Below, in pieces: positions 1,603 to 44,445 of a DNA stretch of 64,000 nt; the stretch's first letter is position 1, and every line of letters starts with the position of its first letter. Location: positions 186,001-250,000 of the IMG/VR virus record IMGVR_UViG_3300005613_000002; one strand, given 5' to 3'. The position numbers and the translations under genes are program-made. The notes below the pieces were generated by a model. The model made no database searches and was not told where the DNA came from. It saw nothing but the letters and a program-made list of their open reading frames with translations.

Positions 1603-1816
1603 TACAATATATCTTAAAATAGGTAAAAAATATAAAACTAGAAATGGTTTAATTACTGAACCATTAATTAAATCCAATAATGGAACTAGTTATATTTTTG
1701 AATCAAAACTTAATGAGCCAGAATTTAAAAGTCCTTCAGTTAGGGAGTGGTTAAAGAATGGAAAGTTTCTAATTGCTGGACATAATCACAGATTAGATTT
1801 AGTTGAGGAAATATAA
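1595..1816 (+). CDS. hypothetical protein
   Basis: ATG overlapping upstream stop; start moved from 1565. Confidence 0.65.
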   Translation: MCNTIYLKIGKKYKTRNGLITEPLIKSNNGTSYIFESKLNEPEFKSPSVREWLKNGKFLIAGHNHRLDLVEEI

Positions 1817-38662: not shown

Positions 38663-38950
38663 TTAAATTTCGATATTACTTGTATCTGTAATCATATCAG
38701 GAAAAGGTTTAGACCATTGAGCACGTTTCATTGAGTTATTCTTTAACTTTAACTCATATGTTAGATTAGTTACGATCATTTTAGAAAAATCAATAACTTT
38801 AGCACTCCCTCGTCTTATATCACTAACTTGAAATTGTGTTGGTTTAATTTCTTTCTTATAAGAAAGAACATTACCACTAAGAGTTTGTGTTGAATCAATT
38901 AAATCTAAATACTTTTGAGGAATTCCTTCTTTTGAATTAATTTTTGACAT
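38663..38950 (-). CDS. hypothetical protein
   Basis: Co-oriented ORF. Confidence 0.6.
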   Translation of the reverse strand: MSKINSKEGIPQKYLDLIDSTQTLSGNVLSYKKEIKPTQFQVSDIRRGSAKVIDFSKMIVTNLTYELKLKNNSMKRAQWSKPFPDMITDTSNIEI

Positions 38951-38968
38951 TTTATTTGTTTTTAATTA

Positions 38969-39025
38969 AAAATGATAGAATTCAAGTGGGTAGTCATACT
39001 AACCATCTTAAATATCTATCATTTT
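38969..39025 (-). other. long imperfect hairpin right after tRNA-like gene
   Basis: AAAATGATAGA/TCTATCATTTT, ATTTAAG/CTTGAAT, TGG/CCA, TAGT/ACTA. Confidence 0.65.
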
Positions 39026-39031
39026 ATTTTG

Positions 39032-39238
39032 TCAACCCAACGGGGTTCGAACCAAACGTGACCTCCTGCATGTTAATACCGCCAATCTATTTCCGATTTC
39101 ATCCAAATTTCATGATATTAGCTTTATATCAATTCATATATTTTACTTTCTTATTTCCACCTTTAGTACCCCATTATCCGTAAACCGCTAAATAAACATT
39201 TAATTAGGACAGGCACTCTACCACTGAGCTATGGGTTG
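39032..39238 (-). tRNA. tRNA-like gene split by about 132 extra nt in the anticodon loop; identity unresolved
   Basis: Acceptor CAACCCA/TGGGTTG + A; TA-GCTC-AGTGGTA-GAGT D-arm; anticodon stem CCTGT/GCAGG; AGGTC; T-arm ACG(TTT)GG-TTCGAAC-CCCGT. Confidence 0.75.
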
Positions 39239-39248
39239 ATGTTTAAAT

Positions 39249-39458
39249 AAAGTAGATTAGGTAGGCTTTCGCATTATTACTTATGCACTTTCGTAATGTT
39301 ACCTTGATGGTTTGTTTCGCATTTCTATTGATTAAACAAAACCAGAGCATCATATTATCACTACCCACGAACTATCTTTCACTCATTGTGATGTTCAAGA
39401 GTCAGTCATGACTATTGTTCCCTATTTCACGACACAAATCTATGGGTTCTACTACTTT
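39249..39458 (-). ncRNA. 210-nt structured RNA of unknown class
   Basis: Closed by AAAGTAG/CTACTTT; internal ACCCA/TGGGT, AGTCA/TGACT, TCAC/GTGA, TGGTT.TTGTTT/AAACAAACCA, GGTAG/CTACC; several GAAA loops; no ORF. Confidence 0.6.
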
Positions 39459-39465
39459 AAATTTT

Positions 39466-39483
39466 CAATATTTTAAAGAACTG
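39466..39483 (-). promoter_or_regulatory. boxA-like antitermination element
   Basis: CAGTTCTTTAAAATATTG about 10 nt after predicted +1, resembling rRNA-leader boxA (GYTCTTT.A.A). Confidence 0.4.
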
Positions 39484-39497
39484 TTTTCTTATAATAC

Positions 39498-39526
39498 TTA
39501 TACGTTAGAAATAAAAAAATGTTACA
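39498..39526 (-). promoter_or_regulatory. ECF-type promoter of ncRNA/tRNA-like locus
   Basis: TGTAAC-N16-CGTATAA, preceded by a weak hairpin and T7. Confidence 0.85.
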
Positions 39527-39542
39527 AAAAAAGTGAACTATT

Positions 39543-39719
39543 TTATTTAACTTCACCAATTATTGATTCAATTCTTTTGATTATATTCAACGTATTATTA
39601 TATGTGTGAATTTTTGCGGTATGACTATATTCTGAAATATTAGGACTATTCATTACATCTGAACGATCTTGATTTTCATTTTTTAATTCTCTAACTAGTT
39701 TTTCGAATTCTAATTTCAT
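39543..39719 (-). CDS. small protein, 58 aa
   Basis: MKLEFEKLVREL...; not in ORF track. Confidence 0.55.
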   Translation of the reverse strand: MKLEFEKLVRELKNENQDRSDVMNSPNISEYSHTAKIHTYNNTLNIIKRIESIIGEVK

Positions 39720-42731: not shown

Positions 42732-42944
42732 TTATGTTAAATATTCTTTCATAAATTTATAAAACTTATCTTTCATTTCAAATTTTAAACGTACCTTTGC
42801 CATATGGTCTTGACATGTTGTTAAGCTTGGTTCTACATGTGCCACACCTCTAATCATTCTAACTGCATTTAGAATTATTTCTACATCTTCTTCACTATAA
42901 TCTTGTTCTAATGTAACTGTAAATCCTTTAACTTTATGTCCCAT
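42732..42944 (-). CDS. conserved phage hypothetical protein
   Basis: KG..VTLE.D...D..E.I.NA+.MI+GV..VE pattern. Confidence 0.7.
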   Translation of the reverse strand: MGHKVKGFTVTLEQDYSEEDVEIILNAVRMIRGVAHVEPSLTTCQDHMAKVRLKFEMKDKFYKFMKEYLT

Positions 42945-42953
42945 GATGAATTA

Positions 42954-43178
42954 TTATAAAGGTGATGTTTGATTTTTACTTGGTTTGAAAATATCCTTAA
43001 ATATCTCATAAGGGACATTTAACTTATTGTTTTGTGAATTAATTAAGACTGCAAATGATTTTTTATCTTTAATTGAAATACTATCAAGTTCACATCTTTC
43101 ACCAGCACATGCTGTGTATCTTGAATCTTTATCCCATATTGTAACATATGGTTCGTATATTTTAAATTTGTTTTCCAT
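42954..43178 (-). CDS. hypothetical protein
   Basis: Start moved from 43259 to avoid overlap. Confidence 0.6.
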   Translation of the reverse strand: MENKFKIYEPYVTIWDKDSRYTACAGERCELDSISIKDKKSFAVLINSQNNKLNVPYEIFKDIFKPSKNQTSPL

Positions 43179-43197
43179 TCTTAAAATATTTATTGAT

Positions 43198-43389
43198 TTA
43201 TCTACAGGTACAATTCTCAACTCTTTTCCCACAACCATCACAATGCCAATGCTCACCATACCCAGAATAATGTTTATAGGTCATTGACCATTTATTACAG
43301 GTTGGACACATACCTGTTGTGGTATGTTTACCTCTACGTTGTAACTCTTTTTCAAGTTCATTTGTTGATGCTAGTCTAAGATTTACCAT
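43198..43389 (-). CDS. small Zn-finger protein
   Basis: CPTC...CDGC. Confidence 0.65.
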   Translation of the reverse strand: MVNLRLASTNELEKELQRRGKHTTTGMCPTCNKWSMTYKHYSGYGEHWHCDGCGKRVENCTCR

Positions 43390-43631
43390 TAGGTTCTTTT
43401 TTCAATTGGTAACATACAGGTAGTACAAAAATCTCTACCATTTTTAAATCTAACTTGTGGATATGGGCAAATACATGTGTCATGAACTAAAGTAATTAAT
43501 CTGGTTTCAAGTTCTTTTGCATAAACTTCCCAACCACAAGAGGGTTCATCAAAACCCTTTAAATAATAATTCATTTCAGTTATTACTTCTTTTCTTAGTT
43601 CAACTATTCCACATTTAGAATTTTTACCCAT
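43389..43631 (-). CDS. small Cys-rich protein
   Basis: CIC...CTTC. Confidence 0.6.
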   Translation of the reverse strand: MGKNSKCGIVELRKEVITEMNYYLKGFDEPSCGWEVYAKELETRLITLVHDTCICPYPQVRFKNGRDFCTTCMLPIEKRT

Positions 43632-43888
43632 TATTCAATATTTTTATTTGCTTCTTCAATAAATTTCATTTGTTCTAATGCCCATTTCCTAGCATCATTA
43701 TAATCTGACTCAATTGGTTTTCGAAAACATTTACCAAATTTTTTACTTAATAGACGAATGTGAACATCATTCTGGTTTAACTTTATTAATGGAGTTGAAA
43801 CTTTATATATTTCAGCAATAACTTTCCCATAATAAGGCTCAATTGTAAATCCATACTCTCTATTATTAATTTTCAAGTTTTCACTCAT
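43631..43888 (-). CDS. hypothetical protein
   Basis: TAATG coupling. Confidence 0.65.
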   Translation of the reverse strand: MSENLKINNREYGFTIEPYYGKVIAEIYKVSTPLIKLNQNDVHIRLLSKKFGKCFRKPIESDYNDARKWALEQMKFIEEANKNIE

Positions 43889-44061
43889 GACTTATTTTTA
43901 TTTAAAATTTTAATTCAATAACAATCCCTTCAATACCATCAGAATACTTAGTTCTTTCACGCATTTCAACAACAATATTATCAATGTTATCATCTAACAT
44001 TTTCTTTATTTCTAATTTGTCAACAACAGTACCTTTTTTATATGTTTCCTGATAGGTAATA

Positions 44062-44445
44062 CTATTTTTTGCCATGATTATAATTTTTTAATTTAAATTC
44101 ATTTACTAGATCATTAACTTTTTTCGGGTCAACAATCTCATAATCTTTTTTGAACTGCATCACATCTTCAATAGTTTTTAACCAACTAAATTTAGCACCT
44201 AATATTTGATGTTTGCTTTGATTATTGGCTTTCATCATTCTTCCAACTTCTTCCTTCACTTTAGTTTTTCTTGCTGGTCTAATTGGAAGATAAGCATATC
44301 TTTTCCCTTTATAATTAAAACTATAACCTAATAGTGTATTATTGAAAATAGTTTCATTCTTTCTAATTGAGAAATGTTTATGCGTAAATATATAAATTAA
44401 CAGAATAGAGTTAATAATTGTAATTATATAATTTAATATCATCAT
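44062..44445 (-). CDS. membrane-anchored basic protein
   Basis: Start moved from 44487. Confidence 0.65.
   Translation of the reverse strand: MMILNYIITIINSILLIYIFTHKHFSIRKNETIFNNTLLGYSFNYKGKRYAYLPIRPARKTKVKEEVGRMMKANNQSKHQILGAKFSWLKTIEDVMQFKKDYEIVDPKKVNDLVNEFKLKNYNHGKK

What the first reader, a model, noticed from the sequence alone, without database searches (positions are those of the whole stretch)
39249..39492. 210-nt multi-stem RNA behind a boxA-like element, co-transcribed with the split tRNA
Seen on -: promoter, CAGTTCTTTAAAATATTG, then an ORF-free region closed by AAAGTAG/CTACTTT with at least five internal stems and repeated GAAA loops, ending 10 nt before the tRNA-like gene. Known: large ornate phage RNAs (GOLLD, ROOL) associate with tRNA genes, and boxA marks stable-RNA operons. 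I see no RNase P, tmRNA or group I/II signature. Inference: a new ncRNA class, perhaps the trans-acting partner that processes the split tRNA.
Basis: partly seen in the sequence, partly recalled or inferred. Interest (0 to 1): 0.7.

Follow-up and report, generated by a model that had tools for sequence, protein, structure and literature searches.

The report
Orphan structured RNA cassette in jumbo phage
A roughly 210-base folded non-coding RNA sits just behind a phage early promoter; I found only three copies (two in this 322-kb T4-like phage, one in a related metagenomic contig), it matches no known RNA family, and it is not needed by the odd tRNA-like gene beside it, so it is real and new but rare and of unknown function.

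Summary
The element is real. On the minus strand (window 39458-39249) a ~210-nt ORF-free stretch, closed by AAAGTAG/CTACTTT, lies behind a genuine phage promoter (GTAAC-N16-19-CGTA[TA]A: 60 copies in the genome, 0.35 expected). It ends 10 nt before a tRNA-shaped gene with a 132-nt insert.

A diverged paralog (64% identity) lies 27 kb away in the same genome, in front of an ADP-ribosyltransferase-like ORF. An ortholog (80%) lies in a Logan contig, again just before the tRNA-like gene.

The three copies share a two-domain fold of 44 pairs. 96.6% of cells are paired, and 13 pairs show compensatory changes against 2 or fewer in slid controls. The loops and junctions are invariant. Single-sequence folding energy is unremarkable (z -0.5 and -0.9).

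There is no Rfam match. No homolog turned up in 74 related phage records (13 complete genomes) or in pattern scans of IMG/VR, JGI metagenomes and GTDB genomes.

Three related phages carry the tRNA-like gene directly behind the same promoter and GTTCTTT leader, without this RNA. So here the RNA is an inserted cassette, not an obligate partner of the tRNA-like gene.

Function is unknown. My best guess is a self-contained early RNA that binds some factor. A cis-acting leader and a mobile element remain open.

The parts
39497..39527 (-). Phage early-type promoter: TTGTAAC (39527-39521), 16-nt spacer, CGTATAAG (39504-39497). The start site is inferred at about 39490.
   Evidence: Sequence. The motif GTAAC-N16-19-CGTA[TA]A occurs 60 times in the genome against 0.35 in Markov shuffles, mostly 6-34 nt before an ATG. 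The start site is not measured.
39469..39481 (-). It is the native leader of the tRNA-like operon and not part of the RNA fold.
   Evidence: The same motif lies between the promoter and the tRNA-like gene in L229, G021 and G019. It occurs 4 times in G000, always in ORF-free stretches. Copy 2 does not have it.
39452..39458 (-). P1, 5' strand (AAAGTAG)
   Evidence: Pairs with 39255-39249. In copy 2 the pair is AATGTAG/CTACATT, one compensatory A-U to U-A change.
39369..39451 (-). 5' domain. Helices: Pa (39449-39447 with 39371-39369), Pb (39437-39433 with 39390-39386) and Pc' (39423-39420 with 39401-39398). Pc' has an 18-nt loop holding a palindrome (AGTCATGACT), followed by the conserved stretch CUGANNNUUGAAC.
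   Evidence: compensatory changes in 1 of 3 Pa pairs, 3 of 5 Pb pairs and 3 of 4 Pc' pairs. The alignment of this domain is less certain, and L230 lacks its first ~40 nt.
39258..39367 (-). 3' domain. Helices: P2 (39367-39364 with 39261-39258); junction RAGUGNNRAUA; P3a (39352-39348 with 39309-39305); CUCU bulge; P3b hairpin of variable length (39343-39336 with 39320-39314); P4 (39304-39301 with 39266-39263); P5 (39298-39294 with 39276-39272), whose 17-nt loop holds the 15-nt conserved core GAAARUGCAYRAGUA; and the GAAAGCC junction.
   Evidence: P5 has 4 of 5 pairs compensatory over three copies. P3a pair 2 runs G-C, G-U, A-U. P2 varies only G-U to G-C. P4 has one mismatch in L230. The invariant columns are listed.
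39249..39255 (-). P1, 3' strand (CTACTTT), followed by a U-rich tail and a 10-nt spacer before the tRNA-like gene
39031..39238 (-). tRNA-shaped gene with a 132-nt structured insert in the anticodon arm (context, not part of the RNA)
   Evidence: ARAGORN finds it only with introns allowed. Homologs occur in G019, G021, L229 (two in tandem) and L230. The acceptor stems covary. ARAGORN's 'anticodon' differs in each of the three loci I ran it on.
38969..39025 (-). AU-rich hairpin (AAAATGATAGA ... TCTATCATTTT) followed by a T run. It looks like a terminator. The 95-aa ORF beyond it (38950-38663) has no promoter of its own.
   Evidence: Read. The generic terminator scan does not call it. No phage-class promoter copy lies between 39031 and 38950. 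Homologs of the 95-aa ORF follow the tRNA-like gene in L229 and L230.

Best explanation
This is a self-contained, lineage-restricted non-coding RNA module of about 210-235 nt.

Shown:
- It lies at the 5' end of two early-promoter-driven units in one T4-like jumbo phage, and in one related phage.
- It has a P1-closed, two-domain fold kept by compensatory changes. The unpaired junctions, the CUCU bulge and the 15-nt core of the P5 loop stay constant.
- It is a cassette. At the tRNA-like locus it sits between a conserved leader motif and the tRNA-like gene, a spot that is empty in three related phages. At the second locus, close relatives have another gene directly abutting the ADP-ribosyltransferase-like ORF.

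Inferred:
- It is made early in infection, as an RNA in its own right.
- At the tRNA-like locus, host RNase P would free it when it cuts the 5' end of the tRNA-shaped neighbour, as in phage T4 tRNA/stable-RNA precursors.
- Its constant loops and junctions bind a protein or small ligand, so it acts as a stable, trans-acting RNA and not as a helper of the neighbouring tRNA-like gene.

Cassette gain and loss fits the promoter-mediated shuffling described for the variable early regions of T4-type phages.
For: - Promoter class.
- Exactly two copies in the genome, by nhmmer and by covariance model.
- A third copy in L230 next to the same tRNA-like gene.
- Conserved fold. The opposite strand folds worse (-17.1 against -23.9 kcal/mol), and seven cells of the two-copy structure are G-U pairs, which would be A-C mismatches on the other strand.
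- No conserved ORF.
- Empty sites: G019, G021, L229. Close homologs of the ADP-ribosyltransferase-like ORF follow a 295-299-aa gene after a 23-32-nt gap.
- At the tRNA-like locus the unit begins with two non-coding RNAs followed by a terminator-like hairpin.
- The surrounding region is a run of small orphan ORFs, each with its own early promoter, like the variable regions of T4-type phages where promoter-stem-loop cassettes mediate shuffling (PMC2839356, PMC4122927).
Against: - There are no expression data. No RNA run could be listed.
- Only three sequences exist, and two are paralogs in one genome.
- Single-sequence folding energies are ordinary. The consensus fold is much weaker than each copy's own minimum-energy fold, and only two helices are shared at high probability.
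- No target or partner is known. No antisense match exists in the phage.
- Copy 2 has no terminator or tRNA after it, so it would remain the 5' UTR of an mRNA unless processed. That fits a cis-acting role as well as a trans-acting one.
- RNase P cleavage of the tRNA-like neighbour is assumed, not shown.
Confidence: 0.4

Rival explanations
1. It is a cis-acting leader. The folded RNA acts on its own transcript or on the transcribing polymerase, either as a processive antiterminator in the manner of HK022 put or Bacillus EAR RNAs, or as a ligand- or protein-sensing switch. It would control read-through or stability of whatever lies downstream.
For: - All copies lie directly behind a promoter, at the 5' end of units whose downstream ORFs have no promoter of their own.
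- There are two copies per genome behind two promoters, as with putL and putR (my own knowledge).
- A terminator-like hairpin follows the tRNA-like gene, before the promoterless 95-aa ORF.
- The 5' GUAGUAG and the 3' CCUACC..CUAC repeats allow alternative pairings (read).
- The P1 3' strand is followed by a U-rich tract in all copies.
Against: - The downstream genes are unrelated: a tRNA-like RNA in one case, an ADP-ribosyltransferase-like ORF in the other.
- Orthologous loci in relatives work without it.
- No predicted intrinsic terminator or expression platform was found.
- At 210-235 nt it is about three times the size of put RNA.
- No known riboswitch or leader family matches.
Confidence: 0.3
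2. It is a small non-autonomous mobile or selfish element, in the style of a MITE or of the mycobacteriophage MPME elements. P1 would be its terminal inverted repeat. It has inserted behind promoters, and the internal conservation would serve its own propagation and not the phage.
For: - Presence/absence polymorphism at both loci.
- An 8-13-bp inverted repeat lies exactly at the ends.
- The left flanks are similar, TTTAAA(A)TATT, at both sites.
- The insertion lies cleanly between the leader motif and the tRNA-like gene.
Against: - There are only two copies, 64% identical. Active MITEs are many and nearly identical.
- I saw no clear target-site duplication.
- No Y1 transposase and no reverse transcriptase in the genome.
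- The only TnpB-like gene belongs to a CRISPR-like locus with unrelated flanking RNA.
- The termini vary while the internal loops are invariant. Internal helices covary, which points to selection on an RNA fold.
Confidence: 0.15
3. One reading: it is the trans-acting partner (ribozyme or guide) that cleaves or splices the neighbouring split tRNA.
For: It is adjacent to the tRNA-like gene in two phages. The insert in the tRNA-like gene matches no self-splicing intron family, so some processing factor might be needed.
Against: - G019, G021 and L229 keep the tRNA-like gene with its insert but have no such RNA at the locus. None is found anywhere in the complete genomes G019 and G021.
- Copy 2 is not linked to a tRNA-like gene.
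- ARAGORN gives the insert a different position in each of the three loci I ran it on. This suggests a built-in domain and not a spliced intron.
- The conserved single-stranded stretches have no complement anywhere else in the phage genome, the tRNA-like gene included.
Confidence: 0.03
4. There is no function. It would be a decaying duplicated spacer whose apparent structure is an artefact of AT-rich sequence and of choosing the structure from the same sequences.
For: Ordinary folding energies. Very few sequences. The structure was partly derived from the data it is tested on.
Against: - The third copy was not used to derive the structure, yet outside the variable P3b tip it fits with two double compensations, two G-U to G-C changes and one mismatch.
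- Long invariant blocks survive at 64% overall identity.
- The column-shuffle z score is -6.5.
Confidence: 0.07

Closest known systems
Phage T4 stable RNAs 'species 1 and 2' (rnaC, rnaD), encoded with the T4 tRNA genes (my own knowledge, not checked here)
   Same: They are small structured phage RNAs of unknown function, co-transcribed with tRNA genes and thought to be released by tRNA-processing enzymes. T4-like phage context.
   Different: No sequence or Rfam relationship could be tested. This RNA is larger. It has a second copy away from any tRNA. It sits in the variable early region, not in the main tRNA cluster (which is at 122-160 kb of this genome).
PeSL promoter-early/stem-loop cassettes of T4-type phages (PMC2839356, PMC4122927)
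   Same: It lies in a variable early region made of small ORFs that each have their own early promoter. It sits exactly at insertion/replacement boundaries between related phages, and an early promoter is at its 5' side.
   Different: PeSLs are short promoter-plus-terminator motifs, not 210-nt multi-helix RNAs with invariant loops. Here the cargo is the RNA itself.
HK022 put RNAs and Bacillus EAR RNA, cis-acting processive antiterminator RNAs (my own knowledge)
   Same: Promoter-proximal folded RNA, two copies per phage genome behind two promoters, independent of what lies downstream.
   Different: It is about three times larger than put. There is no sequence or Rfam match. No effect on termination has been shown.
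GOLLD and ROOL, large ornate RNAs often found in phages near tRNA genes
   Same: Phage-borne, complex fold, next to a tRNA-type gene, function unknown.
   Different: Those are about 600-800 nt and widespread. The Rfam models for them do not match. This RNA is 210-235 nt and I found it in only two phages.
The 'enigmatic introns' in tRNA genes of Lak megaphages (PMC6784885)
   Same: A precedent for huge phages carrying tRNA genes with unexplained inserts. This concerns the neighbouring gene, not the RNA.
   Different: It concerns the insert inside the tRNA, not an upstream RNA. No sequence comparison was made.

Membership tests
Any Rfam 15 family (RNase P, tmRNA, group I/II introns, GOLLD, ROOL, riboswitches, 6S, Y RNA and others) | A covariance-model score at or above the family's gathering threshold | tested here: not met
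   No hit in the whole window at gathering thresholds. At E up to 10 over 38950-39600 the only hit was a 16.9-bit match on the wrong strand. Nothing for copy 2.
boxA/Nus antitermination site | A boxA-like sequence in the transcribed leader just after the promoter, conserved among homologous stable-RNA operons | tested here: inconclusive
   GTTCTTTAA resembles the E. coli rrn boxA core GCTCTTTAA (my own knowledge). It is kept in the leader of the tRNA-like operon in four phages and recurs beside tRNA genes. The 9-mer alone is only mildly enriched (15 against 9). It also lies 1 nt before a protein start codon in G017. Copy 2 does not have it.
boxA/Nus antitermination site | Binding of NusB/NusE and read-through of terminators | not testable with these tools
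   The host is unknown and no transcript data exist.
Retron msr-msd RNA | A reverse transcriptase gene next to an RNA flanked by inverted repeats | tested here: not met
   P1 could stand for the a1/a2 repeats, but there is no RVT_1 match anywhere in the genome at E up to 0.1.
TnpB omega-RNA or type V tracrRNA | Encoded at the 3' end of or next to the nuclease gene, or carrying an anti-repeat complementary to the CRISPR repeat | tested here: not met
   The only TnpB/Cas12f-like ORF lies at 141.8-143.1 kb, with its own 36-nt repeat array. Neither the model nor nhmmer matches there. No anti-repeat lies in either copy.
MITE / small non-autonomous transposon | Terminal inverted repeats | tested here: met
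   8 bp in copy 1, and 13 bp with one bulge in copy 2.
MITE / small non-autonomous transposon | Many near-identical copies, target-site duplications, and a cognate transposase | tested here: not met
   Two copies at 64% identity. I saw no clear duplication at the junctions. No Y1 transposase.
PeSL-type shuffling cassette | An early promoter plus a stem-loop at the boundaries of insertions and replacements between related T4-type phages | tested here: inconclusive
   The promoter and the indel boundaries fit. The element is far larger and more conserved than a PeSL. The promoter in front of copy 1 appears to belong to the tRNA-like operon, not to the cassette.
Riboswitch | A conserved aptamer upstream of functionally related genes, with an expression platform | tested here: not met
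   The downstream genes are unrelated. No terminator or anti-terminator was predicted. Ligand binding cannot be tested here.

The most novel reading that the evidence does not exclude
The three copies are the first members of a new class of phage RNA with an activity of its own. One option is a promoter-proximal RNA that reprograms the transcribing polymerase, a large put-like antiterminator. Another is a catalytic or self-mobile RNA that spreads as a cassette into the leaders of early genes. Its invariant junction (RAGUGNNRAUA), CUCU bulge and the 15-nt core of the P5 loop would form the active or binding site.
Probability: 0.2. Interest if true: 0.75.

Novelty: new variant of a known kind. 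Interest (0 to 1): 0.45.

Why it matters
Jumbo phages carry many unexplained non-coding stretches. This one has a defined promoter, a fold supported by comparison, strictly conserved unpaired nucleotides, and a clear history as a movable cassette. That makes it a tractable candidate for a new phage RNA function, such as control of early transcription, anti-defence, or a ribonucleoprotein.

The work also corrects the picture of its neighbour. The tRNA-shaped gene with a large anticodon-arm insert is a small family of its own. It has a conserved leader motif and does not depend on this RNA.

The narrow distribution (two phages) limits the general importance unless more members are found.

Tried and rejected
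**Searches for more copies**
- Exact-block pattern scans of IMG/VR gave only chance hits or nothing.
- The JGI metagenome scan returned only two contigs that are 100% identical to this same phage.
- The GTDB genome scan gave nothing.
- BLAST, two covariance models and a 3-mismatch core pattern were run over 48-50 related phage records per search (74 records in all, 13 complete genomes). All were negative.
- No relatives in GenBank phages by DNA. By rIIA protein there are only distant ones, under 30% identity.
- The gene next to copy 2 (77 aa) is an orphan.
- Distant homologs of the 95-aa neighbour gave no further copies.
- A scan for more tRNA-like genes found only G019 again.

**Expression**
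- One DNA run holds 5% of the words. No RNA run could be listed.

**Identities considered and dropped**
- Protein-coding.
- Retron.
- TnpB omega-RNA or tracrRNA.
- Antisense regulator of phage genes.
- Group I intron, either as the RNA or as the tRNA insert.

**Other**
- A link to the phage CRISPR repeat through shared 7-8-mers (GGTAGTG, AAGGTAAC, TACCTAA) is same-sense, is weaker in copy 2, and duplex energies are no better than for shuffled repeats. I treat it as coincidence.
- The idea that GTTCTTTAAAATA is a MotA-type middle promoter did not hold in G021, where a -10 box would fall inside the tRNA-like gene.

Full report
**Setting.** The window is bases 186001-250000 of a 321,624-bp IMG/VR virus record with direct terminal repeats. 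GC content is about 27%. The phage is T4-like: it has rIIA and rIIB homologs and a gp23-type capsid gene. Elsewhere in the genome it carries 46 tRNA genes and a tmRNA. The finding lies in a minus-strand run of small orphan ORFs.

- On the minus strand there is TTGTAAC, a 16-nt spacer, then CGTATAAG at 39527-39497. This is the phage's own promoter class. GTAAC-N16-19-CGTA[TA]A occurs 60 times in the genome against 0.35 in Markov shuffles, usually 6-34 nt before a start codon.
- About 15 nt further on comes GTTCTTTAAAATA (39481-39469).
- AAAGTAG (39458-39452) pairs with CTACTTT (39255-39249), closing about 210 nt that hold no conserved ORF.
- Ten bases later a tRNA-shaped gene begins (39238-39031). 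ARAGORN finds it only when a 132-nt 'intron' is allowed.
- Rfam 15 gives nothing at gathering thresholds for the window, and nothing meaningful at E up to 10 for the locus.

**More copies.**
- The genome holds exactly two copies, by BLAST, nhmmer and covariance model. Copy 1 is the finding. Copy 2 lies at G000 252737-252972 (minus strand), outside the window.
- Copy 2 has its own promoter of the same class, with the start site falling at an extended 13-bp P1. About 36 nt after it comes a 229-aa ORF with weak PARP/DUF3990 matches, that is, ADP-ribosyltransferase-like.
- A third copy appeared when I followed homologs of the 95-aa ORF that lies downstream of the tRNA-like gene. Logan contig L230 carries the RNA (cut at its 5' end by the contig edge; 137.6 bits). 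Three bases later comes the same tRNA-like gene (214.7 bits).
- Identities are 80% (copy 1 vs L230), 64% (copy 1 vs copy 2) and 67% (copy 2 vs L230).

**Is it a folded RNA?**
- Each copy alone folds no better than its shuffles (z -0.53 and -0.89). Only P1 and one hairpin are shared at high probability between the two ensembles. The consensus fold is far weaker than either copy's own minimum-energy fold.
- The comparative evidence is much stronger. The two-copy RNAalifold consensus has 44 pairs, all compatible, 11 of them with double changes. Column shuffles give a mean of 3.3 (maximum 9 of 300), and the energy z score is -6.5.
- On three copies, a 44-pair structure (the alifold consensus adjusted by hand) has 96.6% of cells paired and 13 compensatory pairs. 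Slid controls give 0-2.
- L230 played no part in deriving the structure. Outside the variable tip of P3b it adds two double compensations (P3a pair 2, outer pair of P5), two G-U to G-C changes and one mismatch (P4).
- Seven cells of the two-copy structure are G-U pairs, and the reverse strand folds worse, -17.1 against -23.9 kcal/mol. Both agree with transcription from the minus strand.

**Architecture.** P1 encloses two domains.
- The 5' domain has helices Pa, Pb and Pc'. The loop of Pc' carries a palindrome at the same aligned place in each copy: AGTCATGACT in copy 1, GTCATGAC in L230, GTAGCTAC in copy 2.
- The 3' domain has P2, an invariant junction, P3 with a CUCU bulge and a tip of variable length, P4, and P5. 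The 17-nt loop of P5 holds a 15-nt conserved core.
- Long unpaired blocks are identical in all copies. This points to a binding or active site.

**It is a cassette, not a partner of the tRNA-like gene.**
- The capsid protein finds 171 related contigs at 73-88% identity among the 80 kept.
- No copy of the RNA was found in the 74 records searched, 13 of them complete genomes. I used BLAST, two covariance models and a mismatch-tolerant core pattern.
- Exact-block scans of IMG/VR, JGI metagenomes and GTDB genomes returned only chance hits or this same phage.
- The tRNA-like gene does recur: in G019, in G021, and twice in tandem in L229. In each case the phage promoter and a GTTCTTT(A/T) leader lie from 1 nt (G019) to about 12 nt (L229) before the tRNA-like 5' end.
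- In this window the RNA sits between GTTCTTTAAAATAT and ATCAACCC, that is, inserted between that leader and the gene.
- At the second locus, the nearest homologs of the ADP-ribosyltransferase-like ORF (72-81% identity) directly follow a 295-299-aa gene. Homology to this genome starts only about 30 nt before the shared GTG start.
The conserved single-stranded stretches also have no complement elsewhere in the phage.

**The 'boxA-like' string.**
- It belongs to the native leader, not to the RNA.
- It is a real motif. GTTCTTTAAAATA occurs four times in the genome; my composition-based estimate is about 0.2 expected. All four are in ORF-free stretches. Three follow a tRNA gene or a terminator-like hairpin, and the fourth is the present locus, just behind an early promoter.
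- It is conserved in the leader of the tRNA-like operon in four phages.
- Whether it is a Nus-type box, a processing signal or something else is untested. Copy 2 lacks it. In G017 it lies one base before a protein start codon.

**Other identities tested and dropped.**
- Retron: no reverse transcriptase.
- MITE with a transposase: no Y1 transposase, only two diverged copies.
- TnpB omega-RNA or tracrRNA: the phage does have a 432-aa TnpB/Cas12f-like gene followed by a 36-nt repeat array. Neither the region around it nor the repeat relates to this RNA.

**What it most likely does.**
- The fold, not the genomic context, is what is conserved. It is always the first thing transcribed from an early promoter.
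- At the tRNA-like locus the unit begins with two non-coding RNAs followed by an AU-rich hairpin and a T run, before a promoterless 95-aa ORF.
- I therefore favour a self-contained early RNA that binds some factor through its invariant loops and is freed from the precursor by tRNA-type processing (confidence 0.4).
- A cis-acting role is nearly as likely (0.3), either put-like antitermination or a switch acting on read-through into the promoterless downstream ORFs.
- A selfish mobile element (0.15) fits the presence/absence pattern and the terminal inverted repeat. It does not fit the invariant interior and variable ends.
- No RNA-seq run could be listed, so expression, transcript ends and processing are all inferred.

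**Verdict.** This is a genuine, previously undescribed structured RNA module that I found in only two phages. Its function is unknown and it is not tied to the split tRNA-like gene. It is moderately interesting. Its value would rise sharply if a wider covariance-model search found more members, or if an activity were shown.

Noticed in passing
window 39031-39238 (-); L144 1472-1680 (-); L224 1502-1721 (+); L229 1780-1983 and 1985-2194 (+); L230 205-416 (+): The 'split tRNA' is a small family of tRNA-shaped genes. They have covarying acceptor stems and a conserved 107-148-nt structured insert in the anticodon arm, with blocks such as GGAAATANGAAAGTAA and GAAATCGGAAATA. ARAGORN assigns a different anticodon and insert position in each of the three loci I ran it on (Val AAC, Pro TGG, Asp ATC), so the insert may be a built-in domain and not a spliced intron. 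There is no Rfam match. L229 has two copies in tandem. A 95-aa ORF follows the gene in three phages.
   Followed up: partly
window 39469-39481 (-); G000 256292 (-), 157329 (+), 43784 (-): GTTCTTTAAAATA occurs four times in the genome (about 0.2 expected by my composition estimate), always in ORF-free stretches. Three follow a tRNA gene or a terminator-like hairpin. The same motif lies in the leader of the tRNA-like operon of three other phages. Its function is unknown.
   Followed up: partly
whole genome; in the window for example 39497-39527 (-), 38651 (-), 1210 (+), 2373 (+): A phage-specific promoter class, TTGTAAC-N16-(A/T)CGTATAAT, has 60 copies. Most are 6-34 nt before the start codon of a small ORF, and they are concentrated at 186-276 kb of the genome.
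   Followed up: yes
window promoters at about 4351 (+), 14700 (+), 16081 (+), 26390 (-): Four other promoters of this class are followed by unusually long untranslated stretches: 161 nt before a DUF932 ORF, 394 nt, 222 nt before rIIA, and 111 nt. Some are relatively G+C-rich. They are candidates for further non-coding RNAs, and none matches Rfam at gathering thresholds.
   Followed up: no
outside the window: G000 141835-143133 (+) and about 143376-143665: A 432-aa TnpB/Cas12f-like ORF (PF07282, E = 5e-25) is followed by a CRISPR-like array: four perfect and one degenerate 36-nt repeats with spacers of 23-30 nt. A miniature type V-like locus in a jumbo phage.
   Followed up: partly
outside the window: G000 122-160 kb, and 43.8-44.0 kb (-): 46 tRNA genes and a tmRNA, including a tRNA with anticodon CTA (reads TAG). 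This hints at stop-codon suppression or recoding, which I did not examine.
   Followed up: no
outside the window: G000 about 43.1-43.3 kb (-), inside a 1.45-kb ORF-free stretch (42773-44224): Downstream of tRNA-Ile and tRNA-Met lies another tRNA-like end: a GGGGAGA...TCTCCCC acceptor and an ATCGG-TTCGAAT-CCGAT T-arm, enclosing a long AT-rich insert. Read by eye only.
   Followed up: no
L002 772-1461 (-) (G000 about 252.0-252.7 kb): The ORF behind copy 2 is a weak PARP/DUF3990 match, that is, ADP-ribosyltransferase-like. It has hundreds of metagenomic homologs, and its GTG start is conserved in close relatives.
   Followed up: partly
window 39403-39412 (-); L002 about 1674-1681 (-): A perfect palindrome lies at the same aligned position in the Pc' loop but with a different sequence: AGTCATGACT in copy 1 and GTAGCTAC in copy 2. 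This suggests a kissing/dimerisation site or a protein-binding site.
   Followed up: no
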